Virus record (IMG/VR): IMGVR_UViG_3300047499_000113
Span: 62,001-126,000 of that record
DNA: 64,000 nt
Reading direction: 5' to 3' (one strand)
This document shows, one piece after another, positions 40,650-64,000 of the stretch. The translations under genes were made by a program, and so were the position numbers. A model generated the notes under the pieces. It did no database searches. It was not told the DNA's origin and was given only the letters and a program-made list of their open reading frames with translations. How positions within the stretch are numbered: position 1 is the stretch's first letter; the number at the start of each line of letters is the position of its first letter.

Positions 40650-41294
40650 ATGACGATGACCGCGCAGCTGCCCTGGAAGTTTCCGTTCAAGCCAGTGCGG
40701 GCGCCATGGTCAGTCTTCCAGACGTTGACACTCTCCAACTACTTCATGGAGAAGAAGTTCGACGGCTGGCGAGCCATCGTGCAGGTCGGCGCGAACAACA
40801 TCGTGACGCTCTGGACCCGCGAGAAGCGGCTGATCACGATGCCGGACAACTTGAACAAGCAGCTCGCATTGCTCCAGATGCCGGAAGGCACTCTTCTGGA
40901 CGGCGAGATTTGGAACATGTCCAAGCGCGGCGCCTGGAAGCACAATCGCTCGGCCGTGTGCGCCCTGACGCTTTGGGACGCCATCCGGGTCGACACGCGA
41001 GACTTCTCAGGCGAGCCCATCGAGAAGCGGCGGGAGGCCCTGGAGAAGCTGCTCGAGGGCAAGGACACGCCCGACATCAAGGCGACGGAGCTTCTGGCGG
41101 CCGACGAGACTATCGCGCGTCAGATCGACGCGGAAGCCCGGTCATTTCGCGAGGGCTCGCAGGCTCGATCCGGTTTCATTCACGGCGTGGTTTTGAAGCG
41201 GCGTGGGTCGCCGCGACGAGACAACGCCGTTCGGTGTGTCGAGCACGCCGATTGGATCAAGATTGTCTTCGACGGCATGCAGAGCGGCCTCTGA
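40650..41294 (+). CDS. ATP-dependent ligase-like nucleotidyltransferase domain, no OB-fold
   Basis: Motif I EKKFDGWR, III LLDGEI, IIIa LTLWDAI, RREALEKL, IV variant IHGVVLK, V WIKI. The start could be upstream at ATG 40485. Confidence 0.8.
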   Translation: MTMTAQLPWKFPFKPVRAPWSVFQTLTLSNYFMEKKFDGWRAIVQVGANNIVTLWTREKRLITMPDNLNKQLALLQMPEGTLLDGEIWNMSKRGAWKHNRSAVCALTLWDAIRVDTRDFSGEPIEKRREALEKLLEGKDTPDIKATELLAADETIARQIDAEARSFREGSQARSGFIHGVVLKRRGSPRRDNAVRCVEHADWIKIVFDGMQSGL

Positions 41295-42608
41295 TTCTGG
41301 CTGATACTTCCGGACGATCCCGAACAGCTTGACGCCGGCTGCGTCAAAATCGCGCTCGTCCCAAACGTTGCGGCCATCGAAGGCCACCAGGTCCCGGGAT
41401 AGGCGCTTGAGATGCTGCACGTCAGGATTGCGATACTGACGCCACTCGGTGCAAAGGACGATGGCGTCCGCACCAAGGACAGACTCGTACATTTCGCTCG
41501 CGATGCTCACGCGATTGCCGTATCTCTCGTGCACCCGCTGCAAAGCTTGCGGGTCATGCACGATGACGTCGGCTCCGGCCGCGAGCATATCGTCGATGAA
41601 ATCGACAGCAGGAGACTCGCGGATGTCGTCGGTCTCCGCTTTGAACGCGGCACCCCACACGCAGATCTTCTTGCCATGCAGATTGCCGTAGAACTTGGAC
41701 ACGAGCTGGCCGAGCAGGTGTCGCTGGACGTTGTTGGCGTTGTTCGCTGCGTTGACCACGAGAAGATCCTGCCCGACCATCTCCGCCATGTGACGCAGAG
41801 CCATCACATCTTTGGGAAGACAGGAGCCGCCGTACCCGGGCCCGGGGTACAGGTACTGGTGTCCGATACGGGGATCGGCGCCCATCCCGCGACGCACGAA
41901 GTCGATGTCCGCCCCAAGAGCGGTAGCGAGTCTGGCCAGCTCGTTTATGTACGAAATGCGCGTCGCAAGAAACGCATTCGAGGCGTACTTCACGAGTTCG
42001 GAGGACGCCGGATCCATGACGAGCGTCTTGCCCGAGGCCATCGGCCGATAGAGCCGCATGAGGGCGTCTCTTGCGCCGGCGCAGGTGGTTCCAATGACCA
42101 CTCGGTCGGGCCGCATGAAGTCTTCGACCGCCGTACCCTCGCGGAGGAACTCCGGATTGGAGGCCACGCAGCAGTGCTTGTCGAAGTACGACGAGATGAT
42201 CTTGCCGACTGCGTGCGTCGTCCCGACCGGCACTGTGCTCTTGACCACGACAACCTTGTGGGGCTGCTTGGTCTCGCGCAAGACTTCTCCGATCGTGCGC
42301 GCCGTGGCCATCACACTCGATAGGTCGGCCGACCCGTCCGAAGCCTGCGGCGTGCCGACAGTGATGAAGACGACGTCGGCCTGAACGATCGATTGATGAA
42401 CATCAGTCGTGAAGGACAGCCGACCCTCGCCCATGTTGCTGGCGAGCAGGTCGTCCAGGCCGGGCTCGTAGATCGGCGACTTGATGCGGTTGAGCTGGGA
42501 GATCTTGGTCGCGTCGGTGTCCGCGCAAACCACTTCGTTCCCGAACTGCGCGAATCCCGTGCCCGAAACCAAACCAACGTATCCCGCCCCGATCATCGCC
42601 AGCTTCAT
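41142..42608 (-). CDS. ugd: UDP-glucose 6-dehydrogenase
   Basis: IGAGYVGL, FITVGTP, KSTVPVGT, NPEFLREG, KYASNAFLA, GYGGSCLPKD, AFKAETDDIRESP, DGRN; C-terminal extension overlaps the convergent ligase gene. Confidence 0.96.
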   Translation of the reverse strand: MKLAMIGAGYVGLVSGTGFAQFGNEVVCADTDATKISQLNRIKSPIYEPGLDDLLASNMGEGRLSFTTDVHQSIVQADVVFITVGTPQASDGSADLSSVMATARTIGEVLRETKQPHKVVVVKSTVPVGTTHAVGKIISSYFDKHCCVASNPEFLREGTAVEDFMRPDRVVIGTTCAGARDALMRLYRPMASGKTLVMDPASSELVKYASNAFLATRISYINELARLATALGADIDFVRRGMGADPRIGHQYLYPGPGYGGSCLPKDVMALRHMAEMVGQDLLVVNAANNANNVQRHLLGQLVSKFYGNLHGKKICVWGAAFKAETDDIRESPAVDFIDDMLAAGADVIVHDPQALQRVHERYGNRVSIASEMYESVLGADAIVLCTEWRQYRNPDVQHLKRLSRDLVAFDGRNVWDERDFDAAGVKLFGIVRKYQPESEAALHAVEDNLDPIGVLDTPNGVVSSRRPTPLQNHAVNETGSSLRALAK

Positions 42609-42627
42609 CTGCCACCTGTCTGCAACG

Positions 42628-44184
42628 TTACTCGGCGACGGCCTCGGCCATTGGGGGGCTCCTTCTCAGGATAAAATGAGGAAGGTCGCTCTGGCCCATG
42701 GAGTGCTCGTAACGCATGGCCGCCTTGCCTGGATTGAACGGAATACCGAGCTTCTCGCGCACGGAGTTCTCGACCCAATTGCGCATCTTCACCAGCTCTT
42801 CACCGCTCAGGTGATCGGTGAAGACGTACGAGTGGTACCCGCCGTTGGGGTCGCCCTTGTAATATTCGGCCACTTTCGTGAAGTCCACGTCGTAGGCATG
42901 CAGCCTATCACCGGACTTCTTACATGTGTACGTCCAAACGTCCTCGAGCGTCGGGTGCTCGATGGCCTCGTCGTAATACGGGGTGCCGGGGTAGGTCGTG
43001 ATGACCGTGCAGTCGAAATCGTCTGGCTTGACCTGCAAGAGCCAATCATGTACCGCGGTGATCGTTTCCTCGGACTCTCCGGGATGACCCACCGACATCA
43101 GGGCCTTGACCTTGAGCCCATGGCGGCGAGCGATTTCGAGGACGCGCGTGTTGTCGTCGATAGTCGCTTTCTTGTTGATGTTCTGCAGGATGCGCGGAGA
43201 AGCCGCCTCGAATCCGCAGAGAAGCCAGCGGAAGCCAGCGCGGTACATGGCCGCAGCCTGTTCGTCCGTGAAAAGCTCCGACTTAACAAACCCGCGGAGT
43301 CGAAACTCGGCGCCTACTTCGGACTGCAAATCCGACAGTGCATTCATCAGCTCGACGATGCTCGGGTTGACGTTCAGTTCGTCATCGTAGAACATGAACC
43401 CGCGGAATCCGTAGTTGCGATGAAGCATCGCCACTTCGCGCACGATAGACTGCGTCGTGCGAGTGCGGATCATGCGCAGGGACTTGGAATTGCGGCCACC
43501 GCAGAACCCGCATCCGAATGGGCAGCCGAGCTGCGCGATGAGACTCGTGGCCTTCTCGCCATCGATGGTGTAATTGTATGAGCTGACGTCGACGAGATGC
43601 CGTGCCGGGTAGGGCGATGCATCGTAGGAAACGTCCGTCATGAACAGCCCGCTTCGAGGGTCGTCACCGTCGATGATGCGAGGAGCGTCGGGTTTGAGAG
43701 CAGCGAATACGGCAGCCTCACCATCACCCGAGACAAGAACGTCGAAATTCTGCAGCAAGCGGTCGAGTGCGGCGTGGGCACGGCCAGTGCGACCTGCCTT
43801 CTTCTCGAGCTTGACGGCCGAATGCACAAGTGTGACGTGCGGGCCGCCGATGATGATCTTCATGTCCGGTCGGACGGCTCGGATGCGCTCAGCCACCTTC
43901 ACCGCGGCCGGCAATTGCGGTGTGGTCGTAGTCAGGGCTGCGACCCGAGCCCGGGATTTCTTGGCGTACTCGTCGACGACATCGAGATAGTTCTCGATGC
44001 CCGACAAATCGAGGAGTTCGACCTCGTGACCCGCACGCTCAAGAACAGCGGCCACCTTGAGGATGCCGAGACTCATGAATACCCGCTCGTCGAGCAAAAA
44101 CACCGAGGGCGGTGTGATCATCAGGACCGGCTCCGGCGATCCCCTATCCTTGCCGACAAGCCTCCCGAGCGGAATGATATTCAC
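42628..44184 (-). CDS. Cobalamin-binding radical SAM enzyme (class B methyltransferase-like)
   Basis: N-terminal B12-binding domain (LGILKVAAVLERAGHEV...IIIGGPHVT), CPFGCGFC, FYDDELN, GFEAAS, GHPGESEET, TYPGTPYY. Confidence 0.92.
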   Translation of the reverse strand: MNIIPLGRLVGKDRGSPEPVLMITPPSVFLLDERVFMSLGILKVAAVLERAGHEVELLDLSGIENYLDVVDEYAKKSRARVAALTTTTPQLPAAVKVAERIRAVRPDMKIIIGGPHVTLVHSAVKLEKKAGRTGRAHAALDRLLQNFDVLVSGDGEAAVFAALKPDAPRIIDGDDPRSGLFMTDVSYDASPYPARHLVDVSSYNYTIDGEKATSLIAQLGCPFGCGFCGGRNSKSLRMIRTRTTQSIVREVAMLHRNYGFRGFMFYDDELNVNPSIVELMNALSDLQSEVGAEFRLRGFVKSELFTDEQAAAMYRAGFRWLLCGFEAASPRILQNINKKATIDDNTRVLEIARRHGLKVKALMSVGHPGESEETITAVHDWLLQVKPDDFDCTVITTYPGTPYYDEAIEHPTLEDVWTYTCKKSGDRLHAYDVDFTKVAEYYKGDPNGGYHSYVFTDHLSGEELVKMRNWVENSVREKLGIPFNPGKAAMRYEHSMGQSDLPHFILRRSPPMAEAVAE

Positions 44185-44221: not shown

Positions 44222-44923
44222 ATGATCGGGACAGAGATTCGACGTGGGTCTTTTGCCGGTAAAGAGTTCAGCTTCGTGTACTGGAGCGAGCAGACAGGAC
44301 TCGACCCGGACAGGTCCAATGACACATGGTGGGTGTTCGAGGACGAAAAAGAGGTCCGCGAACGTCACTGGCATTTCCAGCCGGGTGACGTTGTCATAGA
44401 CGTGGGTTCGAACTGCGGAGGATATACCCTGACTGCAGCCGTCCAGGGCGCGGAGGTATGGGCTTTCGAGCCCTACAAGCTCTGCTCGAATTGCCTCGCA
44501 GCCAACGTCGCCATCAACCCCGATTTCAACATTCACATCATGCGGGTCGGAGCCTCAGACAAAGAAGAGGAGATCACGGGAATCGATGTATTCGGTCCTC
44601 GACTTGCCGGTTCGAATTCTTTCCCTGGGTATCACGAGCCGCTCAAGCTAGTCCCGCTCGACAGCGTCTTGGGGAATCTGGACAAGGTCGACATGATCAA
44701 GGTCGACATCGAGGGGCACGAGGCTAAGATGTTGCGAGGGGCGGCCGAGCTGATAAAGCGGTGCAAGCCCCGGATGCTCATCGAGGAGCACATCTTCCGC
44801 GACCCATCACTCAGCCAGCAATGTCAGGAGATCATCGAATCATGGAATCTCGGCTACAAAGTCGAGCGGGTTCCACGCGGAGCGGTGATCCACGCGTTCT
44901 GGACTACCGCGGGCCCCTTGTGA
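44222..44923 (+). CDS. FkbM-family methyltransferase
   Basis: VIDVGSNCGGYT, VWAFEP, MIKVDIEGHEAKMLRGA. Confidence 0.9.
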   Translation: MIGTEIRRGSFAGKEFSFVYWSEQTGLDPDRSNDTWWVFEDEKEVRERHWHFQPGDVVIDVGSNCGGYTLTAAVQGAEVWAFEPYKLCSNCLAANVAINPDFNIHIMRVGASDKEEEITGIDVFGPRLAGSNSFPGYHEPLKLVPLDSVLGNLDKVDMIKVDIEGHEAKMLRGAAELIKRCKPRMLIEEHIFRDPSLSQQCQEIIESWNLGYKVERVPRGAVIHAFWTTAGPL

Positions 44924-45062
44924 TCGGATTACCGCATTCCTCACAGCATCCTTCGAGACCGTCGTCGTCTTCGTCGTCTTGAGACACGATCTCGACCAGA
45001 ACCGGATTGCATCGATCCGCTGACGGTCCGTCGATCGGTCGCAGGCATACTGTCTTGTTCAT
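44904..45062 (-). CDS. Small Cys-rich acidic protein (52 aa, below the ORF-track cutoff)
   Basis: ATGA-coupled to the GT stop: MNKTVCLRPIDGPSADRCNPVLVEIVSQDDEDDDGLEGCCEECGNPITRGPR. Confidence 0.45.
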   Translation of the reverse strand: MNKTVCLRPIDGPSADRCNPVLVEIVSQDDEDDDGLEGCCEECGNPITRGPR

Positions 45063-46192
45063 TGGCTAGCCTTCTTGGCTTTGACGTCCTGAATGATGCG
45101 CTCGAGTTCGACGCAGAGAACTCGATAGTCGTACTTCTTGGCGCGTTCACGGCCAAGATCCCACCACTTCTTGTGCTCTTGCTCGTCCTTCAAGAGCTTG
45201 ATGACCAAGTCGGCCCACTCGTGACCGTGATGGCTCGCCGGCGCATTGACCATCGGGCATGCACCCTCATAGATTTCTGGAAGCGCATCCGCTCGAGAGA
45301 TGACCGGCACTGCGCCTGAAGCGCAGCCCTCGATGATGGCTACTCCATACCCTTCCGTGTATTGGAAGGGATCGCACGGATAGGCCAGAACCATTGCCTC
45401 GCTGTACTCGAGCGCGAGCTGGTCCCGGGAAATGGATCCGATGTGAATGACACCCGGCAAGTCGAGCCTGTCGCGCACGAACATTGCTCGACGACCGTGC
45501 TCACGCAGATTGGCCTGAGGCGCACTAATCAGCCCGGGGATGCTCTCGAACCAATGGGCCATCGAGTGATAAAACACTCGAAGCTCGGCATGGGGAACAG
45601 CCTCGCGAATGCGTGGCCACTGGTCAAGGACCAGGTGGAGTCCGCGATCGGGCGACGATGTGTAAATGCAACGACCCGGCACCTTCGGAGCCATATCGTA
45701 GACGGTGGGGTCGCACCCGTTGTACATGGTGTACCACGGGATGTGGGCCGGCGGGCCCATCGTCTTCAATCGCTCACCGAGCGACGTCGAAGCCGGGCCG
45801 AACGCATCCACCCAAGCATACTCGTGCCCTTTGACATACGAAAAGTCGTTGAACTGCATGTCACAGATTCGTACGACTTTCGGGCTGACAATACCGAGCG
45901 CCGCGGGCTCGTTCCAAGTCAACGCAGCATCCCAGGTCTCGTCGATGCATCCGCGCTCAGGATATGGGCGGACTTTGACCTGGCCCCACATCATCGTTTG
46001 GGGATTTTCCGCACAGAAGACAGTCACGTCATGGCCTCGAGCAGCCATGAATTTCGCGTACGACAGGAACGAGCCATCCGTGCCCGTCAGGCCGCGGGGG
46101 TCCTGATTGATACGCGTGAAGTCGAAGGGCCGAGGACCCTGAGGCGACGTTGTGCCTGCGCTGATGGGGCCGAAAAGGAACCCGAGTTTCAT
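45059..46192 (-). CDS. GT-B (GT4-like) glycosyltransferase
   Basis: MYNGCD, YTSSPDRGL, EX7E motif EGYGVAIIE, SGAVPV. Confidence 0.9.
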   Translation of the reverse strand: MKLGFLFGPISAGTTSPQGPRPFDFTRINQDPRGLTGTDGSFLSYAKFMAARGHDVTVFCAENPQTMMWGQVKVRPYPERGCIDETWDAALTWNEPAALGIVSPKVVRICDMQFNDFSYVKGHEYAWVDAFGPASTSLGERLKTMGPPAHIPWYTMYNGCDPTVYDMAPKVPGRCIYTSSPDRGLHLVLDQWPRIREAVPHAELRVFYHSMAHWFESIPGLISAPQANLREHGRRAMFVRDRLDLPGVIHIGSISRDQLALEYSEAMVLAYPCDPFQYTEGYGVAIIEGCASGAVPVISRADALPEIYEGACPMVNAPASHHGHEWADLVIKLLKDEQEHKKWWDLGRERAKKYDYRVLCVELERIIQDVKAKKASQ

Positions 46193-48459: not shown

Positions 48460-49427
48460 CAGATTCCCCTCTTGAGATACCAGGCAATCGTCTTGGCGAT
48501 GCCCTGATCGTACGGCACTTTCGGTTCCCAGCCCAAGAATTTCTTGGCGAGCGCGATGTCCGGGCAACGCTGCTTCGGATCATCCGTGGGCAATGGCTTC
48601 ATGACGATGTCGCCCTCTCCGCCGAAAGCGGAGATGACATCCATGGCCACACTCTTGATGGTACGCTCGTCGGGGTTGCCGATGTTGACCACCGGGATGC
48701 GCTGATGGAGTGTGTCCACATCGACGTTCTTGATGGCTCGGAAGTTGACCTCCATGAGCTTCACGAGTGCATCGACGGTATCCGAGACGTAGCAGAAGCT
48801 CCTGGTCTGGCTTCCGTCGCCGTAGACCGTCAGCGGCTCTTTCTGCATGGCCTGCAGGATGAAGTTCGGAATGAGCCGGCCGTCACGGAAAGCCATCCGT
48901 GGACCGTAGGTGTTGAAGAGTCGCGCGATGCGAACGTCGGTGCCGTACTGGTTGGCCCAGGCGACCGCGAGACTCTCGCCGATGCGCTTGCCCTCGTCAT
49001 AGCAGGCACGCGGCCCGAGCGGATTGACGTGACCCCAGTAGCTCTCCTTCTGCGGATGCACCTCGGGGTCGCCGTAGACTTCGGAAGTCGACGTGATGAG
49101 GAGACGTGCCCGGGTGTTGCGCGCGCACTCGAGCGCGTTGCGCGTGCCCATCATCGCAGTCTCGATGGTCCGCACCGGGTTGCGTTGGTAGTGCACCGGG
49201 CTCGCAGGGCAGGCCAGATGGTAAATCTGGTCACACTCGATGTGCCACGGGTCGCAGACGTCGTGCCGGTAGAACTCGAAGTCCCGATGGTCGAACAGGT
49301 GAGCGATGTTCTCCCGGTGAGAGGTGAACATATTGTCGATGCAGACGACCTCGTGTTTCTGCGCGAGCAGAAATTCGCAGAGGTGACTTCCGATGAAACC
49401 CGCGCCTCCTGTGACAATTATGCGCAT
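48459..49427 (-). CDS. uxs: UDP-glucuronate decarboxylase (UDP-xylose synthase)
   Basis: TGGAGFIGSHL, YHLACPASPVHYQRNP, TSTSEVYGDP, YDEGKR, RLFNTYGPRM, GSQTRSFCYVSD, DDPKQRCPDI. Confidence 0.93.
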   Translation of the reverse strand: MRIIVTGGAGFIGSHLCEFLLAQKHEVVCIDNMFTSHRENIAHLFDHRDFEFYRHDVCDPWHIECDQIYHLACPASPVHYQRNPVRTIETAMMGTRNALECARNTRARLLITSTSEVYGDPEVHPQKESYWGHVNPLGPRACYDEGKRIGESLAVAWANQYGTDVRIARLFNTYGPRMAFRDGRLIPNFILQAMQKEPLTVYGDGSQTRSFCYVSDTVDALVKLMEVNFRAIKNVDVDTLHQRIPVVNIGNPDERTIKSVAMDVISAFGGEGDIVMKPLPTDDPKQRCPDIALAKKFLGWEPKVPYDQGIAKTIAWYLKRGI

Positions 49428-49912
49428 ATGAACTTCTCCAGATACCTAATAGCGGCTTTGAGAAGCTGGATGTTATCCAGAAAGCGCGCAAGTCCATTAT
49501 TGCATCTATCGCAGAGGAGACCTCGAATGATCTGAGTCAGATGATCATGATCCACGCTTAGACGCTTGAATTTCGTGCACTTTCGTTCGCAGATTGCACA
49601 TACACCATTCTGAGCTGCGAGCATCTGCTCATATTCTTCAACAGTGAGATTTCGACGCTGAAGGCTCCGAACTAACGGATAGTTAGGATGCTTCTCCTTC
49701 CAACGGAGATCTGCTTGTTTTTTATCCTCTGGGTCTCGAGCTGCTCTCCTAGCCTTCACTCTCTCAGGATGTCGTTTCTGATAATTCTCGACATTCACAC
49801 GTTGTTTGTCGAGATGGAACCCGCACTTCCAGGGAGTGAGACCTTTGGCTTTGCGATCGCGACAATCTTCGCATGGAGCATTTGTTGGTCTTGTAATTTC
49901 GAAAACGCTCAT
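49418..49912 (-). CDS. Endonuclease VII-family homing endonuclease
   Basis: ATGA-coupled ATG 49912; QNGVCAICE...LSVDHDH...IRGLLCDRCNNGL; low GC. Confidence 0.9.
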   Translation of the reverse strand: MSVFEITRPTNAPCEDCRDRKAKGLTPWKCGFHLDKQRVNVENYQKRHPERVKARRAARDPEDKKQADLRWKEKHPNYPLVRSLQRRNLTVEEYEQMLAAQNGVCAICERKCTKFKRLSVDHDHLTQIIRGLLCDRCNNGLARFLDNIQLLKAAIRYLEKFICA

Positions 49913-55920: not shown

Positions 55921-56345
55921 TTTGACTTCTCCAGATACTCGGCGGCCATCCGCAACTGAATGGAACTGTCTTTCATCAGCTCAAGAGCCCTATTGCAATC
56001 TGTGCATAGAAGACCACGGATCACGTTTGTCTTGTGATCGCGGTCCACGGAAAGACGGATGACTTTGCCGTTTATCGTGCGCACTTCCTTCTCGCGACAT
56101 ATGGCACAGACTCCATTCTGTTCAACGAGAATTTGATCATAGTCTTCAGGAGGGATGCCGTAATCGTTCTTGAGGTTTCGTCGACGGACGCTCTCAGAGT
56201 GGAGAGGATCTAACCCATCGCGTTCGCGCCGAGTCGCAACACTTCTTTTTTTGCTGGCGGCATACGCTTCTGGATTCAGTTCACGGCTTTTCTTACTCCG
56301 TTCTATAGATGCTGCCTTCCTTTTCTGGGGGTCTTTGTACGGCAT
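55908..56345 (-). CDS. Endonuclease VII-family protein with His-to-Arg change in the DHDH motif
   Basis: TAATG-coupled; QNGVCAICR...LSVDRDH...IRGLLCTDCNRAL; low GC. Confidence 0.85.
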   Translation of the reverse strand: MPYKDPQKRKAASIERSKKSRELNPEAYAASKKRSVATRRERDGLDPLHSESVRRRNLKNDYGIPPEDYDQILVEQNGVCAICREKEVRTINGKVIRLSVDRDHKTNVIRGLLCTDCNRALELMKDSSIQLRMAAEYLEKSKCPR

Positions 56346-59300
56346 TAGATATTCCTGACTTCGGTGTACGAAATGAGCGTGTTACCTGAGTAGGTATATG
56401 TGATCGTCACTTGTCCAATGACGGTGACGCCATCAGAAGCATAGGTTTTGCGAACTTCCTGCGTGACTCGAGAACCCGAGTAGGTGTAGTCGATGGATTT
56501 GAGGAGGGTGCTCGTAGCGTGATTCGTCCAAGTCTCTCGATAGACCTTGCTCCCAGAGTAAGTCGCTGCGTAATCGTTGGTGACCTCGACGGGATCGTTG
56601 CAAGCGAGCAGGAAGTCATTGTAGCTAGGACCGGTGACTGACGGACCGGTTGCTCCTTGCGGTCCAGTTGCACCGGTGCTTCCAACAGGACCCGTTGCTC
56701 CCTGGGGGCCAGTTTGCCCTTGTGGCCCTGTTGCTCCTTGAGGCCCCGTAGCGCCAGTGCGACCAGCGGCTCCAGTTGGTCCTGTCGCGCCTTGCGGTCC
56801 CGTCGACCCGGTGACACCTGGTGAACCTTGAGCACCTTGCGGACCGGTCGATCCGGTAACACCTGGCGAGCCTTGAGTCCCCTGCGGACCGGTAGCTCCA
56901 GTTGATCCGGCGGGGCCGGTGGCGCCTTGTGGTCCTGTGGCACCCGTCGGTCCAATTTGGCCAGTAGGTCCTTGCGATCCGACCGGTCCCGTAGCACCTT
57001 GAGGACCTGTTGCTCCAGGAGATCCTTGCTGCCCTTGTGGACCTGTAGCGCCTGGAGATCCCTGTGCACCCTGGGGCCCTATCGGTCCTGTCGGCCCAGT
57101 GGCCCCGGTAACTCCGGGAGAACCCTGCAGCCCTTGTGGTCCTGTAGCGCCGGTAACACCAGGTGAACCCTGAGGGCCTTGCGGCCCGGTAGATCCTGTA
57201 CTTCCGACAGGGCCTGTCTGTCCTTGAGGCCCGGTTGCTCCCGTAGCGCCAATTGGTCCGGTCGGACCTTGTGGCCCAGTAGCCCCCGTGATTCCAGGTG
57301 AACCCTGCTGCCCTTGTGGACCTGTAGCGCCAGTGCGACCAGCGGCTCCAGTTGGTCCTGTCGCGCCTTGCGGTCCGGTCGCTCCTGTAGCTCCAATGGG
57401 GCCGGTCGCACCCTGAGGACCAATGGGACCAGTCGATCCTTGAGGACCCGTGGCTCCGGTGCTACCAATAGGACCAGTGGAACCCGTGACTCCGGGGCTC
57501 CCTTGGGATCCTTGAGGTCCGGTGGCGCCGGTAGATCCAATGGGCCCAGTTGCACCTTGTGGTCCTGTAGCGCCGGTAACACCAGGTGAACCCTGAGGAC
57601 CTTGCGGCCCAGTCGACCCAGTGACTCCGGGTGAACCTTGAGGTCCCTGTGGACCTGTAGCGCCGGTGCTCCCGATAGGACCAGTCGCTCCTTGCGGACC
57701 GGTGGGTCCAGTCGCACCGATCTGTCCAGTTGGACCATGCGGACCGGTCGCGCCAGTGCTTCCAATCGGGCCAGTCGACCCAGTTACTCCAGGCGAACCT
57801 TGTGCGCCTTGAGGACCGGTGGCACCAGTTGAACCAACCGGGCCCGTAGCACCCTGCGGTCCGGTGCTTCCCGTTACCCCTGGACTACCCTGCTGACCTT
57901 GCGGACCGGTGGGGCCAGTGGCACCAGTAGAACCGACCGGACCCGTGGCACCCTGCGGTCCAGTGGAACCCGTACTACCGATTTGTCCAGTTGGGCCCTG
58001 GGGTCCTGTAGTTCCGGTTACCCCCGGGGATCCCTGAGGACCAATAGGACCGGTTGGGCCCGTATTTCCTGTGACTCCGGGTGAACCCTGCGGGCCTTGG
58101 GGTCCAGTTGCTCCTGTGGATCCTATGGGGCCAGTTGAACCTTGCGGTCCTGTGGCTCCGGTGCTCCCAATTGGGCCAGTCGATCCTTGTGGTCCAGTTG
58201 CTCCTGTGACTCCCGGCGACCCCTGCGAACCTTGAGGGCCAGTGGCACCCGTGACCCCTGGGCTGCCCTGTTGACCTTGGGGGCCTGTAGCGCCAGTGCT
58301 GCCAATCGGACCAGTTTGTCCCTGAGGACCGGTAGGACCGGTAGGACCCGTAACTCCTGGCGATCCCTGCGAACCTTGCGGGCCCGTTGAACCAGTGACC
58401 CCGGTGACTCCAGGAGATCCTTGCTGACCCTGAGGTCCAATGGCGCCAGTGCTGCCTACAGGACCAGTCGGACCGGTTGCACCCGTCGAACCGATCGGGC
58501 CGGTTTGCCCCTGTGGACCGGTGGCGCCCGTAGACCCTATCGGGCCAGTTGAGCCCTGAGGCCCTGTGGCGCCCTTTACGCCAGGGGACCCTTGGGGGCC
58601 TGTACTTCCGGTTGAGCCTTGCGGTCCAGTCGACCCAGTAACTCCCGGACTTCCTTGTTGTCCTTGAGGTCCGGTTGACCCCGTGACGCCAGGAGAGCCC
58701 TGCTGACCTTGCGGGCCGGTCGCACCGGTAGACCCGATCGGGCCGGTTGGACCTTGGGGACCGGTTGCGCCAGTGCTACCCACAGGACCGGTCGAGCCCT
58801 GAGCACCTGTCGCTCCTGTGACTCCTGGCGATCCTTGTGTTCCCTGAGGTCCGGTAGCACCGGTCGGTCCGACATCGCCAGTCGGTCCCTGAGGTCCTGT
58901 GGAACCTGTGACTCCCGGTGATCCTTGAGGTCCTTGCGGTCCTGTCGATCCGGTTGGGCCCTGTGGACCAGTCGATCCAGTTTGGCCCTGAGGACCTGTG
59001 CTGCCAGTGACACCAGGCGATCCCTGAGCGCCTTGGGGGCCCGTTGGACCCGTGACGCCTGGCGATCCTTGAGTTCCTTGCGGACCAGTTGCACCTGTGG
59101 AACCGATCTGGCCGGTTGGTCCTTGCGGGCCGGTCGACCCCGTAGACCCTATTGGTCCGGTCGCTCCCGTGATGCCTGGTGAGCCTTGAGGTCCTGTGGC
59201 GCCAGTGACCCCGTCAGCACCAGTAGCACCCTGCGGTCCGGTCGCTCCTATAACGCCAGGAGATCCCTGCGGTCCAATAGAACCAGTCGCACCTGTGACA

Positions 59301-61048
59301 CCCGGTGAACCTTGGGAGCCTTGCGGGCCTGTGCTTCCGGTCGGTCCAACATCTCCGGTCGCACCTTGGGGCCCAGTCGCTCCCGTCGATCCAACAGGCC
59401 CGGTCTCTCCCTGTGGGCCAGTTGAACCTGTAGGTCCGATGTTTCCCGTAGGTCCTTGGGGCCCGGTGCTACCGGTGACACCGGGAGATCCCTGGGGGCC
59501 AGTCGCGCCAATCGGACCGGTCTGGCCCTGGGGACCAGTTGCGCCAGTAACACCCGGAGACCCTTGCGGGCCAGTAGACCCCGTAATCCCAGGGCTTCCC
59601 TGCGGGCCAGTGGCACCTGTAACCCCGGGAGATCCCTGACTACCCTGCGGGCCTGTAGCGCCGGTGGCCCCGTCCGGCCCTGTAGCTCCAGTGGAACCAA
59701 TTGGCCCGGTAGAACCCTGAGGGCCAGTGCTGCCGGTAACTCCTGGTGACCCTTGAGTGCCCTGCGGGCCAGTGGCACCTGTAACCCCGGGAGATCCCTG
59801 TTCACCTTGCGGGCCGGTCGCTCCCGTGGCTCCGACGTCACCCGTAGGACCCTGAGGTCCAGTTGCGCCAGTCGATCCTTGCTGTCCAGTCGGCCCTTGG
59901 GGACCTGTAGACCCCGTTACTCCGGGAGAACCTTGATCCCCTTGAGGGCCAGTTGCTCCCGTTGGTCCGATGCTGCCAGTCGATCCCTGGGGGCCAGTTG
60001 CTCCCGTGACTCCTGGGCTGCCCTGATCGCCCTGAGGACCTGTAGAACCGGTCGGTCCAATAGAGCCCGTTGATCCTTGCGGACCCGTGGCTCCAGTTGC
60101 TCCTTGGGGCCCAGTTGCACCGGTAGAACCAACAGGTCCCGTGGACCCGGTGACTCCTGGAGAGCCTTGGCTGCCTTGCGGTCCTGTAGCTCCAGTGGCA
60201 CCATCTACGCCAGTTGCGCCTTGAGGGCCCGTGGTACCTTGAGGACCGGTCGAGCCCGTGACACCAGGGGAACCCTGCTGGCCCTGAGGACCCGTGGACC
60301 CCGTGACACCCGGCGAGCCTTGATCTCCCTGTGGACCGGTTGCCCCTGTAGCACCTTGGGGACCTTGCGGGCCTGTAGCGCCAGTGGAACCGACTTCTCC
60401 AGTCGGCCCTTGCGCTCCGGTTGAGCCAGTTACGCCTGGCGATCCTTGCTGTCCTTGCGGTCCTGTGGCGCCCGTAGCCCCGTCGACACCCGTCGCACCC
60501 TGGGGACCCGTTGCGCCTGTGGAGCCGACTGGTCCGGTTTCTCCTTGCGGGCCAGTAGAACCGGTGACGCCAGGGGTCCCCTGATCACCCTGAGGTCCCG
60601 TCGCGCCTGGAGAACCCTGCTGCCCTTGCGGACCGGTCGGACCAGTAACTCCATCATTGCCTTGAGGCCCGGTCGGACCAGTAACTCCCGGAGAACCCTG
60701 CGGGCCTTGGGGACCGGTCGGTCCAGTCGCGCTGAGAGGCCCTGTAACTCCAGAGGGGCTGAGTGAATAAATCTGACCGGTGTCAGTGATGTAGAGGTCC
60801 CAAGGCAGACCGCTCGGAGTGAGGATTTGGAGAGGCGGAGCTAGTCCGGTCGGCGACAAACCCGTGTACGGCACGAAACCGACATAGCTCATCGCCAGAT
60901 CGAGATCTGGCTTCAGCGAGTCATCGTCGAGATAGATATCGACGTAGATCGTCGCATTCGAGACACCAGTGATCACCGCGCCCGCGTCGATGACATTCTC
61001 GAGCGCAGTCTGATTGATCGGGTTGGACTGGTATCTATAGATGCCCAT
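56345..61048 (-). CDS. Giant Thr-rich collagen-like fibre protein (1567 aa)
   Basis: ~105-aa N-terminal domain, roughly 455 Gly-X-Y triplets ([18 protein letters not shown]) with no interruption that I could see, and a ~95-aa beta-rich C-terminal domain. Confidence 0.92.
56748..57376. repeat. Exact 53-nt direct repeat within the collagen gene
   Basis: GTAGCGCCAGTGCGACCAGCGGCTCCAGTTGGTCCTGTCGCGCCTTGCGGTCC at 56748-56800 and 57324-57376. Confidence 0.8.
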
Positions 61049-64000
61049 TACACGAGCTCAACGGTCACAACGACCTGGCTAACAGCAGGGGAAACGCTGG
61101 CTGTTTTTGTGGCCTGAATCGTCACTTGATCGCCGGCGTTGACGTTGACGGTGTGAAGCGTGTCCTGGCCAGTCGTCACGTTGCCGGCAACAGTCGCGGA
61201 GAGACTCGTGGTTGTGCCATTGACCTCCACCGTGTAAGTGATGGTGTTTGTAGAAGTGCTCGGCGAATTCTGCATCACGTAGAGATGCTGCAGAGTGCCG
61301 CTCCTCGTCACGCGCAAGCGATAGATATCTGAAGTTGCAGCGAGGCTCGAGACGTAGCCTGGATAGAGCCAGCGCGTTGCAGTCGTCGTCGCCATGCTGT
61401 CGGCGGCGAAGACGAGAATGGTGCCCGCGCCCGGACCTCGAGGTCCGGTGGGTCCGGTTACACCCGTGGGACCAGCCGGGCCAGTTGGACCAGTTGCACC
61501 TTGAGGCCCGGTCGGTCCCGTGGCTCCGATCGGTCCCGTGGCTCCTGTAGTGCCGAATGGTCCGGTGGGCCCAGTGAAGCCCGTAACGCCTGGCGATCCT
61601 TGCGGACCGATCGGACCTGTGGGCCCGGTGACACCGGTCACTCCGGGGCTGCCCTGCGGCCCAATCGGTCCAGTTGGACCAGTTGCACCCTGAGGTCCTG
61701 TTGCGCCGGTGACCCCCGGCGATCCTTGCGGACCGACAGGACCAGTCGGACCAGTGAATCCAGTTACTCCCGGGCTGCCATGCGGCCCGATCGGACCGGT
61801 GGGTCCAGTGACACCCGTTGCTCCCTGAGGCCCGGTGGGTCCAGTTGCGCCTTGCGGGCCAGTTGCACCCGTGACACCATTGGCCCCGGTCGGTCCTTGC
61901 GGGCCAGTGAATCCAGTGACGCCCGGCGATCCTTGAGGCCCGGTCGCGCCAGTGGGGCCAATGTCGCCGGTCGGGCCCTGAGGACCCGTAGCCCCCGTGA
62001 CTCCCGGAGAGCCTTGTGGTCCGATCGGACCCGTAGGTCCGGTTGCACCCGTGACCCCAGGAGAGCCTTGCGACCCGACCGGGCCGGTAGCACCTGTTGG
62101 TCCTATGTCACCAGTCGGTCCTTGAGGACCCGTGGCCCCTGTGACGCCAGGTGAGCCCTGCTCACCTTGGGGTCCAGTTGGACCCGTGGCTCCAGTGACT
62201 CCATCAGCACCGGTAGCCCCTTGCGGACCGGTTGCACCCGTCGGCCCGATATCGCCAGTCGGACCTTGAGGACCTGTAGCGCCAGTAACTCCAGGAGATC
62301 CCTGATCGCCTTGCGGACCGGTTGCACCCGTGACGCCGGGAGAACCTTGCGGCCCGATGGGGCCTGTAGCACCGGTGACGCCAGGTGAGCCCTGCGGTCC
62401 TGTGGCGCCGGTTGCTCCGTCAGCTCCCGTTGCTCCTTGCGGCCCAGTTGCCCCGGTAACACCCGGTGAGCCTTGAGGACCTGTTGCTCCTGTAACGCCA
62501 TCTACTCCGGTGGCTCCTTGAGGCCCGGTAGCACCGGTTGGGCCAATTTCTCCAGTTGGACCCTGCGGCCCAGTGGCGCCAGTCACCCCCGGTGAGCCCT
62601 GATCGCCTTGCGGACCTGTCGGTCCAGTGGTGCCTGTCACACCATCGGCGCCAGTGGCTCCTTGTGGTCCGGTAGCGCCCGTGACTCCAGGAGACCCTTG
62701 TTCACCTTGCGGGCCGGTCGCGCCCGTAGCACCGTCCGCTCCGGTCGCTCCTCGAGGACCGGTGGCGCCAGTCACACCATCAAAGCCAGTAGCACCCTGC
62801 GGACCAGTCGCTCCGGTAACTCCCGGGCTGCCCTGATCGCCTTGCGTACCAGTTGCTCCCGTGGGCCCAATGTCTCCCGTGGGCCCTTGCGGTCCAGTCG
62901 CTCCTGTAACGCCCGGCGAACCCTGCGGACCGAAGTCTCCAGTCGGGCCCTGAGGCCCGGTGGCTCCAGTTACACCATCTGCACCGGTCGGGCCCTGCGG
63001 ACCTGTGGCGCCCGTGGGACCGATATCGCCAGTTGGACCTTGTGGGCCGGTGGCTCCAGTGACTCCGGGTGACCCCTGCTCCCCTTGAGGCCCTGTCGCG
63101 CCCGTGACTCCATCAGCGCCCGTAGGACCCTGAGGACCAGTTGCTCCAGTCGGTCCAACATCACCAGTAGGACCCTGGGGACCTGTCGCGCCCGTAACTC
63201 CGGGTGAACCCTGATCACCTTGTGGACCCGTAGCACCCGTGACGCCATCAACTCCGGTAGCCCCTTGAGGTCCGGTGGCGCCGGTAACTCCATCGACACC
63301 TGTCGCGCCCTGAGGGCCTGTCGCCCCGGTAACGCCCGGCGAGCCTTGGTCTCCTTGCGGGCCGGTGGCTCCAGTAACTCCTGGGCTACCTTGATCGCCC
63401 TGCGGGCCCGTGGGACCGGTCGCGCCTGTGACACCGTCATTGCCCTGTGGTCCAGTGGCGCCCGTGGGTCCGATGTCACCAGTAGGCCCTTGAGGTCCTG
63501 TCGCGCCCGTAACTCCAGGAGATCCCTGGTCTCCCTGAGGACCCGTAGCGCCGGTCGCGCCATCAGGTCCAGTTGCACCCGTAAAGCCATCGGCACCAGT
63601 CGGTCCCTGTGGGCCAGTAGCTCCGGTGACTCCATCGGCACCCGTAGCCCCTTGTGGGCCGGTGGCTCCGGTGATACCCGGCGAGCCTTGATCACCTTGA
63701 GGCCCAGTTGGACCGGTGGCACCCGTGGCTCCGTCTGGACCCGTGGCTCCTGTGACTCCTGGAGATCCTTGATCGCCCTGGGGTCCAGTCGCTCCCGTAA
63801 CTCCGGGGGAACCCTGCGGTCCAGTCGCTCCTGTGGGACCAATATCACCAGTTGGTCCTTGGGGTCCTGTGGAGCCAGTAACCCCATCAGCTCCCGTCGC
63901 ACCTTGCGGTCCAGTTGCTCCGGTGACTCCGGGTGAACCTTGATCGCCTTGCGGACCTGTCGGACCGGTTGCCCCATCAGGTCCTGTGGCTCCCGTCACT
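61048..64000 (-). CDS. Second Thr-rich collagen-like fibre protein, 5' end outside the window
   Basis: More than 850 aa of Gly-X-Y, then a ~125-aa beta-sandwich C-terminal domain (C1q/BclA-CTD-like); TAATG-coupled to the next collagen gene. The Met in the ORF track is an edge artefact. Confidence 0.92.

What the first reader, a model, noticed from the sequence alone, without database searches (positions are those of the whole stretch)
41142..64000. Candidate phage-encoded virion glycosylation system: sugar synthesis, five GT domains and two methyltransferases next to giant Thr-rich collagen fibres
Seen: in the run of structural genes, between the collagen/fibre genes and the head-tail joining genes, lie Ugd, Uxs, a GT2-TPR-GT4 fusion, a double GT4, a single GT4, a B12 radical SAM enzyme and an FkbM methyltransferase. 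All but FkbM are co-oriented, and several are translationally coupled. Thr dominates the Y position of the collagens. Established: Ugd then Uxs converts UDP-Glc to UDP-GlcA to UDP-xylose. GT2-TPR enzymes glycosylate proteins (SunS; the GT2 gene sgtA beside bclA3 in C. difficile). GPT-rich BclA of the Bacillus exosporium is O-glycosylated. Some mycobacteriophages glycosylate virions with their own GTs. Inference: this phage builds a methylated, xylose/GlcA-containing O-glycan on very long collagen fibres, giving a glycan coat for shielding, adhesion or triple-helix stabilisation in place of hydroxyproline. I do not know a described phage with this full combination.
Basis: partly seen in the sequence, partly recalled or inferred. 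Interest (0 to 1): 0.92.

Follow-up and report, generated by a model that had tools for sequence, protein, structure and literature searches.

The report
Huge-phage collagen fibre glycosylation gene cluster
A very large soil-type bacteriophage carries, directly after genes for two collagen-like fibre proteins about 0.4 and over 0.6 micrometres long, its own sugar-making and sugar-attaching enzymes, which most likely coat those fibres with sugars; this has not been described for phages and can be tested.

Summary
The gene content holds up. On the minus strand from 64000 to 41142 lie two giant Thr-rich collagens, four fibre-associated unknowns, a GT2-TPR-GT4 fusion, Uxs, a double GT4, a single GT4, an inverted FkbM methyltransferase, a B12-radical SAM enzyme and Ugd. 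The window belongs to a 240-kb IMG/VR contig of a huge-phage lineage.

Evidence for protein, and specifically collagen, glycosylation:
- The GT2-TPR half resembles GmaR and SunS in sequence. The fold model resembles SunS/ThuS and OGT/SPY. All of these glycosylate proteins or peptides.
- Where 8 kb of upstream sequence is available and the fusion is at least 40% identical, 24 of 32 loci have co-oriented collagen genes upstream.
- Among 32 large contigs of the lineage, the fusion and the collagens are both present or both absent.
- In an unrelated phage family, a stand-alone GT2-TPR gene follows a Thr-rich collagen gene in 33 of 55 loci, like sgtA beside bclA3 in C. difficile.
- The collagens have no stabilising salt-bridge triplets.

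Caveats: Thr at Y is common in phage collagens that lack this cluster. Distant fusion homologues occur without collagens. The radical SAM chemistry is undecided. "Head-tail joining" neighbours were not verified. No glycan has been observed.

Verdict: new variant of a known kind, interest 0.75.

The parts
61048..64000 (-). Collagen B. This is the C-terminal 983 aa of a gene that continues past the window end. It is at least 2220 aa with at least 693 GXY triplets (predicted helix at least ~595 nm) and ends in a ~125-aa non-collagen C-terminal domain.
   Evidence: Pfam Collagen E 3e-130. Thr at Y in 153 of 285 triplets. Extension read through L203. No KGD/KGE triplets.
56345..61048 (-). Collagen A, 1567 aa. 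It has a 108-aa N-terminal domain, 454 uninterrupted GXY triplets (~390 nm) and a ~97-aa C-terminal domain.
   Evidence: Pfam Collagen E 4e-204. Thr at Y in 229 of 454; X position is mostly P, S or A. TGP 28% and TGA 12% of triplets, KGD/KGE 0.
55908..56345 (-). Free-standing Endonuclease VII/HNH-type homing endonuclease gene. It is an insertion, not part of the pathway.
   Evidence: Pfam Endonuclease_7 E 1e-18. Paralogous to 49418-49912. Found in no other phage among the 76 GT loci searched; the only other copy is in L004, a 100%-identical contig of the same phage.
54484..55920 (-). o478, a low-charge, Thr/Ala/Gly/Ser-rich fibre-associated protein. Its C-terminal domain is shared with o252.
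   Evidence: phrog_8198, E 8e-10. Homologues lie between the collagen and the GT fusion in L035, L029, L005 and L006. No PDB hit.
53723..54481 (-). o252, a small fibre-associated protein with the same domain as the o478 C-terminus.
   Evidence: phrog_8198, E 6e-6. Homologues in L029, L035, L005 and L006.
52750..53694 (-). o314, a conserved protein of unknown function that lies close upstream of the GT fusion in relatives.
   Evidence: 54-64% identical homologues at the same position in L035, L029 and L239. No Pfam, PHROG or PDB hit.
52411..52737 (-). o108, a small conserved protein directly upstream of the GT fusion.
   Evidence: A very similar 109-aa protein occupies the same position in L239. 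No family hit.
49909..52395 (-). GT2(GT-A)-TPR-GT4(GT-B) fusion, proposed as the initiating protein O-glycosyltransferase plus the first elongating glycosyltransferase. The probable true start is M13, about 52359.
   Evidence: Pfam GT2, TPR and GT4. DTGS, DGDD and EX7E motifs invariant in 25 homologues. PDB sequence hits GmaR 5e-16 and SunS 5e-5. AlphaFold model pLDDT 86 with GT-A 19-201, helical repeats 214-434 and GT-B 457-811. Foldseek hits SPY/OGT and ThuS/SunS.
49418..49912 (-). Second free-standing Endonuclease VII/HNH-type homing endonuclease gene, inserted between the fusion and Uxs.
   Evidence: Pfam Endonuclease_7 E 2e-21. In L001 and L239 the fusion is followed directly by Uxs.
48459..49427 (-). 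Uxs, UDP-glucuronate decarboxylase (UDP-xylose synthase).
   Evidence: Human UXS1 matches at E 2e-110 over the full length, against 9e-36 for the next class. The GxxGxxG, TSEVYG and YDEGK motifs and the Arg are conserved. It is up to 82% identical in relatives that have it, though no homologue was detected in a number of fusion-bearing loci.
46189..48459 (-). Double GT4: two paralogous GT-B glycosyltransferase domains joined by a Pro-rich linker.
   Evidence: Pfam GT4/GT1. N-terminal against C-terminal half: 27% identity, E 5e-29. Each half has EX7E.
45059..46192 (-). Single GT4 glycosyltransferase.
   Evidence: Pfam Glyco_trans_1_4 and Glycos_transf_1. 31% identical to the C-terminal half of the double GT4. 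EX7E and SSPDRGL motifs present.
44222..44923 (+). FkbM-family SAM-dependent methyltransferase, proposed to O-methylate a sugar. It is inverted relative to the rest of the cluster.
   Evidence: Pfam Methyltransf_21 E 6e-16. TIGR01444 scores 81.8 bits against a cut-off of 37.7. In L001 the homologue is co-oriented with the cluster.
42628..44184 (-). B12-binding-domain radical SAM enzyme. Its chemistry is undecided: C-methylation or an AprD4-like sugar deoxygenation.
   Evidence: Pfam B12-binding and Radical_SAM. CPFGCGFC motif present. No NCBIfam equivalog reached. Best PDB hits are AprD4 at 3e-15 and TsrM at 4e-4. Homologues 65-70% identical occur in other GT clusters.
41142..42608 (-). Ugd, nucleotide-sugar 6-dehydrogenase, most likely UDP-glucose 6-dehydrogenase.
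   Evidence: Three Pfam domains. TIGR03026 scores 430 bits against a cut-off of 190, with TuaD and AglM as best equivalogs, both below their cut-offs. The catalytic Cys lies in GGSCLPKD.

Best explanation
This is a phage-encoded, cytoplasmic protein O-glycosylation system for virion fibre proteins. Its main target is most likely the giant Thr-rich collagen-like fibres encoded directly upstream in the same transcription direction.

Proposed steps:
1. Ugd oxidises host UDP-glucose to UDP-glucuronate, and Uxs decarboxylates that to UDP-xylose. The family assignments are shown; the enzyme activities are inferred.
2. The GT-A domain of the fusion is held on its protein substrate by the TPR region and puts the first sugar on Thr (or Ser) hydroxyls of the GXT repeats. 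This would work as SgtA does on BclA3 and GmaR on flagellin. This step is inferred from homology and synteny.
3. The four paralogous GT4 domains extend the glycan, with UDP-Xyl and/or UDP-GlcA among the donors (inferred).
4. FkbM O-methylates a sugar, and the B12-radical SAM enzyme C-methylates or deoxygenates one (inferred; the chemistry is open).

The glycan coat would stabilise and solubilise triple helices that have neither hydroxyproline nor salt bridges. It may also shield the fibres or make them adhesive. The two homing-endonuclease genes are later insertions with no role in the pathway.
For: Enzyme identities are supported.

None of the enzymes has a predicted membrane helix, and no flippase, polymerase or initiating phosphoglycosyltransferase was seen among the ORFs of the window that were scanned against Pfam.

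The GT2-TPR half matches GmaR (flagellin O-GlcNAc transferase, GT + TPR; PMC9638930) at 5e-16, and SunS. The fold model (pLDDT 86) matches the protein O-glycosyltransferases SPY and OGT and the peptide glycosyltransferases ThuS and SunS at E about 1e-14.

Synteny: collagen ORFs lie upstream and co-oriented in 24 of 32 loci where the fusion is at least 40% identical and at least 8 kb upstream is available (6 of 6 at 60% or more). Three of the eight exceptions carry collagens elsewhere on the same contig. The same holds in L001, L239 and L240 from other assemblies.

Within the lineage defined by the core gene at 38871-39770, 10 of 32 contigs of at least 150 kb have both the fusion and collagens, 22 have neither and none is discordant. 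A tree of 32 such loci (9 labelled positive) suggests one gain and two joint losses.

Independent replicate: a stand-alone GT2-TPR family of about 360 aa, with at least 543 hits in IMG/VR, has a same-strand Thr-rich collagen ORF upstream in 33 of 55 loci, at a median distance of 1.6 kb. This mirrors sgtA beside bclA3, where SgtA (GT-A + 4 TPR) adds O-GlcNAc to Thr of GPT repeats (PMC7157674).

The collagens have 0 KGD/KGE among about 1140 triplets, whereas KGD makes up 13% of triplets in viral collagen-like proteins. (Gly-Pro-Thr)10 folds only when its Thr residues are glycosylated (PMC11923368).

In a complete podovirus, the fusion homologue and further GT and methyltransferase genes directly follow the major capsid gene, so the family sits in structural modules.
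Against: No glycan, glycoprotein or enzyme activity has been observed; everything rests on sequence and comparison.

Thr at Y is common in phage collagens that lack this fusion, so it is not a specific signal.

Fusion homologues at 40% identity or less mostly lack nearby collagens (2 of 24; MAG loci). The family is therefore not restricted to collagen acceptors.

Five loci with 40-47% identity showed no collagen in the sequence available.

Co-occurrence is confounded by shared ancestry. The well-supported branches of the tree do not force more than one gain or loss event. Absences were scored with pattern-based scans.

The other Thr-rich proteins nearby (o478, o252 and the 1939-aa sheath) are equally possible acceptors.

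The donor sugar of the initiating GT is unknown. Ugd substrate specificity is below the equivalog cut-offs.
Confidence: 0.55

Rival explanations
1. The cluster glycosylates virion proteins other than the collagens. Candidates are the non-collagen fibre proteins between the collagens and the fusion, the decorated 1939-aa tail sheath, or the capsid. Under this view the collagens are merely neighbours in the structural module.
For: Mycobacteriophage glycans sit on capsid and tail-tube subunits (as summarised in PMC12619734). In podovirus MW202524.1 the fusion homologue directly follows the major capsid gene and no collagen is present. Distant homologues lack collagens. o478, o252 and the sheath are Thr-rich and low in charge.
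Against: The directional adjacency of collagen followed by GT2-TPR recurs in an unrelated phage family and in C. difficile (PMC7157674). The collagen and the fusion are gained and lost together in the lineage. The collagens offer by far the most acceptor Thr residues (262 and at least 409).
Confidence: 0.2
2. The cluster makes or remodels a polysaccharide of the infected cell, such as capsule, LPS or a wall polymer. The purpose would be superinfection exclusion or keeping progeny from sticking to debris, not virion modification.
For: This is the default reading of phage GT and Ugd genes in the literature (PMC7029224, PMC10202952). Ugd, Uxs, GT2 and GT4 are typical of polysaccharide clusters.
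Against: No membrane segments occur in any of the enzymes. No flippase, polymerase, initiating phosphoglycosyltransferase or export gene was seen among the ORFs of the window that were scanned against Pfam. The cluster lies inside the late structural gene run. The GT-A + TPR and TPR + GT-B architecture matches protein glycosyltransferases.
Confidence: 0.1
3. The glycosyltransferases hypermodify phage DNA bases to evade restriction.
For: Phage GTs are known to glycosylate DNA with diverse glycans (cited in PMC12619734).
Against: No hydroxymethylase or other base-modification gene was seen among the scanned ORFs of the window. TPR-bearing GT-A and GT-B enzymes of the SunS/GmaR/OGT type act on proteins. 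The cluster sits among structural genes and co-varies with the collagens.
Confidence: 0.03

Closest known systems
SgtA/BclA3 of Clostridioides difficile, and the glycosylated BclA of the Bacillus exosporium
   Same: A GT-A domain followed by TPRs is encoded next to a GPT-rich collagen-like surface-filament gene. SgtA puts O-GlcNAc on Thr of the collagen repeats (PMC7157674). BclA carries methylated oligosaccharides on its collagen region (PMC6222408). The stand-alone phage GT2-TPR genes (about 360 aa) have the same size and architecture as SgtA (358 aa).
   Different: Here the system is viral. The GT-A-TPR is fused to a GT-B and accompanied by three more GT4 domains, nucleotide-sugar synthesis (Ugd, Uxs), FkbM and a radical SAM enzyme. 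The collagens are 5 to more than 10 times longer.
Mycobacteriophage virion glycosylation (Freeman et al. 2023, known here through PMC12619734)
   Same: Phage-encoded glycosyltransferases in the structural gene region modify virion proteins.
   Different: The acceptors there are the C-termini of capsid and tail-tube subunits, not collagen fibres. No phage-encoded nucleotide-sugar synthesis or TPR-bearing fusion is known to me in that system. Homology between the GTs was not tested.
Giant-virus glycosylation machineries: Mimivirus L230 and its collagen-like proteins; chlorovirus A064R (PMC9614988)
   Same: Virus-encoded, host-independent glycan synthesis. There are multi-domain transferases that combine GT and methyltransferase domains (A064R), and a viral enzyme that glycosylates viral collagen-like proteins (L230).
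   Different: L230 hydroxylates Lys and then adds Glc, which is different chemistry, and the hosts are eukaryotes. The chlorovirus glycans are N-linked to the capsid protein. The enzymes here are bacterial-type GT2 and GT4.
GmaR (Listeria), SunS/ThuS (Bacillus) and OGT/SPY protein glycosyltransferases
   Same: These are the best sequence matches (GmaR 5e-16, SunS) and fold matches (SPY, OGT, ThuS, SunS) for the fusion. Like it, they use helical-repeat domains next to the catalytic domain.
   Different: None of them combines GT-A, TPR and GT-B in one chain. Their acceptors are flagellin, glycocin peptides and nuclear or cytoplasmic proteins.
Riftia cuticle collagen (Mann et al. 1996, cited in PMC11923368)
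   Same: Glycosylated Thr at the Y position takes the stabilising role of hydroxyproline. (GPT)10 folds only when galactosylated.
   Different: It is an animal extracellular collagen. It is an analogy for the physical role only.

Membership tests
UDP-glucuronate decarboxylase (UXS, extended SDR) | N-terminal GxxGxxG NAD-binding motif and the extended SDR fold | tested here: met
   GGAGFIG at residues 7-13; Pfam Epimerase and GDP_Man_Dehyd match over the full length.
UDP-glucuronate decarboxylase (UXS, extended SDR) | Closer to characterised UXS than to other SDR sugar enzymes, with the catalytic Thr/Ser-Glu, Tyr-x3-Lys and Arg conserved | tested here: met
   Human UXS1 matches at E 2e-110 against 9e-36 for the next class. 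TSEVYG, YDEGK and the aligned Arg are conserved.
UDP-glucuronate decarboxylase (UXS, extended SDR) | Converts UDP-GlcA to UDP-Xyl | not testable with these tools
   Needs an enzyme assay.
UDP-glucose 6-dehydrogenase | Three-domain architecture with the catalytic Cys in GGxCxxKD | tested here: met
   Three Pfam domains; GGSCLPKD at residue 260.
UDP-glucose 6-dehydrogenase | Specific for UDP-glucose rather than UDP-ManNAc, UDP-GlcNAc or GDP-Man | tested here: inconclusive
   The best NCBIfam equivalogs are the UDP-Glc dehydrogenases TuaD (430 bits) and AglM, far above the ManNAc and GlcNAc models but below their own cut-offs of 700 and 670.
GT-A + TPR protein glycosyltransferases (SgtA/GmaR/SunS type) | GT2 (GT-A) domain with a DXD motif, followed by TPR or helical repeats | tested here: met
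   DTGS and DGDD are invariant in 25 homologues. Pfam TPR hits occur in 18 of 25 members. The model shows helical repeats at 214-434.
GT-A + TPR protein glycosyltransferases (SgtA/GmaR/SunS type) | Detectable sequence and fold relationship to characterised members | tested here: met
   GmaR 5e-16 and SunS 5e-5. ThuS and SunS by Foldseek at 6e-14, TM-score on the target 0.55-0.65. NCBIfam SunS is only 23 bits against a cut-off of 350, so this is not an equivalog. SgtA itself was not compared.
GT-A + TPR protein glycosyltransferases (SgtA/GmaR/SunS type) | Encoded next to the gene of its acceptor protein | tested here: met
   Collagen genes lie upstream and co-oriented in 24 of 32 related loci and in 33 of 55 loci of the stand-alone family. 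That the neighbour is the acceptor is inference.
GT-A + TPR protein glycosylating enzymes (SgtA/GmaR/SunS type) | Transfers a sugar to Ser, Thr or Cys of a protein | not testable with these tools
   Needs an in vitro assay or glycoproteomics.
GT4 (GT-B, retaining) glycosyltransferases | Pfam GT4/GT1 domains and an EX7E motif | tested here: met
   Pfam hits for all three proteins. EX7E is present in all four domains. The GT-B fold appears in the model at 457-811.
Cobalamin-dependent (class B) radical SAM methyltransferases | N-terminal B12-binding domain plus a radical SAM core with CxxxCxxC | tested here: met
   Pfam B12-binding 8e-15 and Radical_SAM 4e-26; CPFGCGFC.
Cobalamin-dependent (class B) radical SAM methyltransferases | Methyl-transfer chemistry | tested here: inconclusive
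   No NCBIfam equivalog is reached (about 100 bits at best against cut-offs above 480). The closest solved relative is the diol-dehydratase AprD4 (3e-15), ahead of the methyltransferase TsrM (4e-4).
FkbM-family methyltransferases | Match to the family model above its curated cut-off | tested here: met
   TIGR01444 scores 81.8 bits against 37.7; Pfam Methyltransf_21 scores 59.4 against 22.7. The substrate is unknown.
Collagen-like triple-helix proteins | Long uninterrupted Gly-X-Y repeats flanked by non-collagen domains | tested here: met
   454 uninterrupted triplets in collagen A; runs of 537, 73, 66 and 17 in collagen B; N- and C-terminal non-collagen domains.
Collagen-like triple-helix proteins | BclA-type C1q/TNF-like C-terminal trimerisation domain | tested here: inconclusive
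   A sequence search of the collagen B C-terminal domain against the PDB gave no significant hit. No fold model was made.
Mycobacteriophage-type virion glycosylation | Phage-encoded GTs within the structural gene region | tested here: met
   The cluster lies between fibre genes and conserved core genes upstream of the tail sheath gene. In the podovirus it lies next to the capsid gene.
Mycobacteriophage-type virion glycosylation | Glycans on the C-termini of capsid and tail-tube subunits | not tested
   The capsid and tube genes are not identified in the window. No experimental data exist.

The most novel reading that the evidence does not exclude
GT2-TPR enzymes would be a widespread, previously unrecognised class of phage-encoded collagen-threonine O-glycosyltransferases that functionally replace prolyl hydroxylase. 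In small phages a single enzyme would serve short collagen-like tail-fibre segments. In one lineage of huge phages the enzyme fused to a GT-B and recruited Ugd/Uxs, three more GT4 domains, a methyltransferase and a radical SAM enzyme. Together these would build a complex xylose/GlcA-containing, methylated glycan that allows charge-free triple helices of 0.4 to over 0.6 micrometres, the longest predicted for any virus.
Probability: 0.4. Interest if true: 0.85.

Novelty: new variant of a known kind. Interest (0 to 1): 0.75.

Why it matters
Phage glycosyltransferases are usually read as DNA-modifying or host-surface-modifying enzymes (PMC7029224, PMC10202952). Virion glycosylation by phage enzymes is known only from mycobacteriophages.

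If this reading is right, four things follow.
- Collagen-like fibres of many phages are glycoproteins, which bears on host recognition, on adhesion to mucus or biofilm, and on how phage particles are recognised by antibodies.
- It would explain how prokaryotic and viral collagens without hydroxyproline or salt bridges fold and stay folded over hundreds of nanometres.
- It would supply a compact, soluble enzyme set for making glycosylated recombinant collagens.
- It would show huge phages carrying a complete glycan pathway from nucleotide sugar to finished glycan, so far a hallmark of giant eukaryotic viruses.

The claim is directly testable by co-expression in E. coli.

Tried and rejected
Searches that found nothing useful:
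- Megablast of the cluster against GenBank phages gave no match.
- A protein search of the fusion in GenBank phages gave only distant hits, at most 31% identity.
- The scan of genome contigs returned only MAG contigs of many phyla, so it gave neither a host nor a cultured bacterial homologue. Collagens were rarely nearby in those loci.
- PHROGs and Pfam gave nothing for the flanking genes 35593-41080 or for o108 and o314.
- PDB sequence searches with the collagen B C-terminal domain, o478 and an o314 profile gave nothing.
- No tRNA genes are present in the window.
- Literature searches for phage + collagen + glycosyltransferase or UDP-xylose found no description of this system. Freeman et al. 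2023 is not held.

Analyses that failed or were limited:
- The AlphaFold model of the conserved core protein at 38871-39770, built from an 8-sequence alignment, had pLDDT 47, so no fold search was run and \"head-tail joining\" stays unverified.
- tblastn of a collagen segment against phages was mostly masked as low complexity. It returned only short (about 65 aa) collagen stretches in tail-fibre proteins.

Ideas considered and set aside:
- A haloarchaeal origin, suggested by the Volactin hit, was rejected because the proteome is not acidic.
- Thr at Y as a specific marker of glycosylation was rejected because it is common in phage collagens without this cluster.
- The TPR resemblance to the collagen prolyl 4-hydroxylase peptide-binding domain (PF23558) was seen in 4 of 25 fusion members and 3 of 7 stand-alone members, but below the gathering score and among many generic TPR hits. 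It is kept only as a lead.
- o108 as a glycocin-like peptide substrate: it is not Cys-rich and nothing supports the idea.

Full report
**What is in the window**

The window has about 60% G+C and its proteome is not acidic. It is identical to positions 62,004-126,003 of IMG/VR contig IMGVR_UViG_3300047499_000113, which is 240 kb long.

A 1939-aa tail sheath gene lies at 24830-30649. Its C-terminal part is closest to a 485-kb uncultured phage (40%), to the 309-kb Tunturiibacter phage Tunturi_5 and to Bacillus phage G. Relatives of the cluster lie on contigs of up to 473 kb. This is therefore a huge tailed phage, and no close relative exists among deposited phage genomes.

**The observation**

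Reading the minus strand from 64000 downwards, the genes are:
- collagen B, which runs off the window;
- collagen A;
- an Endonuclease_7 ORF;
- four proteins without family assignment: o478, o252, o314 and o108;
- the GT2-TPR-GT4 fusion;
- a second Endonuclease_7 ORF;
- Uxs;
- a double GT4;
- a single GT4;
- FkbM, on the plus strand;
- a B12-binding radical SAM enzyme;
- Ugd.

Uxs is secure. It aligns with human UXS1 over its whole length at E 2e-110, while every other SDR class scores 9e-36 or worse, and the catalytic motifs are conserved.

Ugd has the three domains and the catalytic cysteine. Its best equivalogs are UDP-glucose dehydrogenases, although below their cut-offs.

The 792-aa ORF is a true double GT4. 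All four GT4 domains are paralogues that share the EX7E and SSPDRGL motifs. The GT2 has its DXD motif.

Most of the minus-strand genes from collagen B to the single GT4 overlap their neighbour by 1-13 nt or are separated by fewer than 30 nt.

Collagen A has 454 uninterrupted triplets with Thr at Y in 50%. Collagen B continues beyond the window to at least 2220 aa and at least 693 triplets. At 0.286 nm per residue these are helices of about 390 nm and at least 595 nm.

The two Endonuclease_7 ORFs are paralogues (40-48% identical). They are found in no other phage among the GT loci searched, so they are recent insertions of mobile homing-endonuclease genes.

- "Two methyltransferases": the radical SAM enzyme reaches no equivalog, and its closest solved relative is the sugar diol-dehydratase AprD4.
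- "Head-tail joining genes": the neighbours have no family hits, and the one structure model was poor.

**Is it a protein glycosylation system?**

None of the enzymes has a membrane segment. None of the window ORFs scanned against Pfam encodes a flippase, polymerase, initiating phosphoglycosyltransferase or base-modification enzyme.

The N-terminal half of the fusion matches the glycosyltransferase domain of GmaR at E 5e-16, and SunS more weakly. GmaR is built as GT + TPR and puts GlcNAc on flagellin (PMC9638930).

A confident model of the fusion (pLDDT 86) shows a GT-A domain at 19-201, helical repeats at 214-434 and a GT-B domain at 457-811. Its best structural matches are the TPR + GT-B protein O-glycosyltransferases SPY and OGT, and the GT-A + helical peptide glycosyltransferases ThuS and SunS. 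Both halves therefore look like enzymes that act on proteins, not like polysaccharide synthases.

**Is the collagen the acceptor?**

Four comparative results bear on this.

1. Synteny. Seventy-three viral loci with a fusion homologue were fetched. In every locus with collagen ORFs they lie upstream on the same strand; L059 has an additional one downstream. Where at least 8 kb upstream is available, the counts by identity of the fusion are 6 of 6 (at least 60%), 11 of 16 (45-60%), 7 of 10 (40-45%), 2 of 15 (33-40%) and 0 of 9 (below 33%). Three of the exceptions (L009, L012, L019) have collagens further away on the same contig. Three loci from other assemblies show the same order: giant collagen, small fibre proteins, fusion, Uxs, then further cluster genes (GT4s in L001 and L239; Ugd in L239 and L240). 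Accessory genes vary between loci. These include Ugd, two kinds of radical SAM enzyme, FkbM, a TylF-type methyltransferase fused to a GT4, and a SAM methyltransferase domain inserted into the fusion. This is the pattern expected of a diversifying surface glycan.

2. Joint presence and absence. The conserved core gene at 38871-39770 defines a large huge-phage lineage with 138 hits, which also shares o443 and an actin-like gene. Among its 32 contigs of at least 150 kb, 10 have both the fusion and the lineage's collagen motif, 22 have neither and none is discordant. On the core-gene tree of 32 such loci, the 9 labelled positive fall in one clade supported at 100/98, with two nested groups that lack both features. 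In those groups the site upstream of the core gene holds unrelated genes. The well-supported branches do not force more than one event, and absences rest on pattern scans, so this evidence is moderate.

3. An independent replicate. Of 120 unrelated viral stretches found with a generic Thr-rich collagen motif, seven carry a stand-alone GT2-TPR gene of about 360 aa. It is 22-26% identical to residues 21-400 of the fusion and lies 0.3-2.8 kb downstream of the collagen ORF on the same strand. Searching with those seven found at least 543 relatives in IMG/VR. Of the best 80 loci, 33 of the 55 with enough upstream sequence have a same-strand collagen ORF upstream (median 52 triplets, Thr at Y 0.69), and only 4 have one elsewhere. 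This is the arrangement of sgtA and bclA3 in C. difficile. There SgtA (GT-A residues 1-260, four TPRs) adds O-GlcNAc to Thr of GPT repeats in vitro (PMC7157674).

4. Physical need. The two collagens contain no KGD or KGE among about 1140 triplets, and almost no Lys or Arg. In viral collagen-like proteins in general, KGD alone makes up 13% of triplets and is held to clamp the helix. (Gly-Pro-Thr)10 is a random coil unless its threonines are glycosylated (PMC11923368).

**Limits**

Thr at Y is not diagnostic. TGP and TGA triplets are frequent in viral and bacterial collagens, and the generic motif hit more than 120 stretches, none of whose listed contigs carries the fusion.

Distant fusion homologues occur without collagens. 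In the complete 42.6-kb podovirus MW202524.1 the fusion homologue, two more GTs, two methyltransferases and a HAS-like GT follow the major capsid gene. The family is thus best described as virion-protein glycosyltransferases whose acceptor is the structural protein encoded upstream. In the huge-phage lineage that protein is the collagen.

The other Thr-rich proteins nearby could also be modified. The identity of each sugar, the methylation and every biological role are inference.

**Comparison with what is known, and verdict**

The closest known systems are:
- SgtA/BclA3 and BclA, for the same enzyme architecture beside the same kind of acceptor;
- mycobacteriophage virion glycosylation, for the same idea with different acceptors;
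- the giant-virus glycosylation machineries, for their autonomy, their multi-domain GT-methyltransferase enzymes and Mimivirus L230 acting on viral collagen (PMC9614988).

The held literature that mentions phage GTs beside collagen-like proteins reads them as DNA or host-envelope modifiers (PMC10202952, PMC7029224). No paper found links them to collagens.

I rate this a new variant of a known kind. Confidence is 0.55 in the full mechanism and about 0.7 that it is a virion-protein glycosylation system of some sort. Interest is 0.75.

Noticed in passing
window 33654-34688 (-): A 344-aa actin-fold protein matches Pfam Volactin (PF25216) at E 2.6e-73. Homologues 44-79% identical sit a few kb downstream of the core gene in most loci of the huge-phage lineage that extend far enough. 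A phage-encoded volactin-like cytoskeletal protein may deserve its own study.
   Followed up: partly
window 24830-30649 (-): The tail sheath protein is 1939 aa. It has normal sheath N- and C-termini but about 1500 aa of inserted Thr/Val/Gly/Ala-rich domains, including an E1_FCCH-like stretch. It is probably a heavily decorated sheath and another possible glycosylation target.
   Followed up: partly
window 49418-49912 and 55908-56345 (-): Two paralogous Endonuclease_7/HNH ORFs are inserted between the fusion and Uxs and between collagen A and o478, each overlapping its neighbours. They are found in no other phage among the related loci, so they are mobile homing-endonuclease genes.
   Followed up: yes
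L322 (Synechococcus phage S-CAM7, KU686213.1 15887-19828): A 942-aa protein with 147 GXY triplets (Thr at Y 0.61) is directly followed by an annotated group 1 (GT4) glycosyltransferase. This is another independent collagen-GT adjacency, in a cultured cyanophage.
   Followed up: partly
homologues P0009, P0012, P0023 and others; P0044, P0056, P0099, P0108, P0116: Some fusion homologues have a class I SAM methyltransferase domain inserted between GT2 and GT4 (about 1100-1150 aa). Others carry intein or LAGLIDADG domains.
   Followed up: no
window 52750-53694 (-), and L035, L029, L239: o314 is a conserved 314-aa protein that lies close upstream of the fusion in relatives. By eye, one stretch recalls a glycoside-hydrolase catalytic motif, but no profile or PDB search supports this.
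   Followed up: partly
TPR region of the fusion family and of the stand-alone GT2-TPR proteins (e.g. L363:2994-4058, L420:9273-10355): Weak, sub-threshold Pfam matches to TPR_P4H and TPR_leprecan, the collagen-peptide-binding TPR domains of prolyl hydroxylases. They appear in 4 of 25 fusion members and 3 of 7 stand-alone members.
   Followed up: partly
IMG/VR contigs of the lineage, e.g. IMGVR_UViG_3300032782_000001 (L129, L160, L194, L222, L233, L237): Single huge-phage contigs carry collagen genes at several separate places tens of kb apart, not only next to the GT cluster.
   Followed up: no
window 18683-19726 (+) and 1884-3479 (-): Weak matches to a putative O-methyltransferase family (Methyltransf_35, E 2e-5) and to a glucosaminidase domain (E 2e-4), both below their cut-offs.
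   Followed up: no
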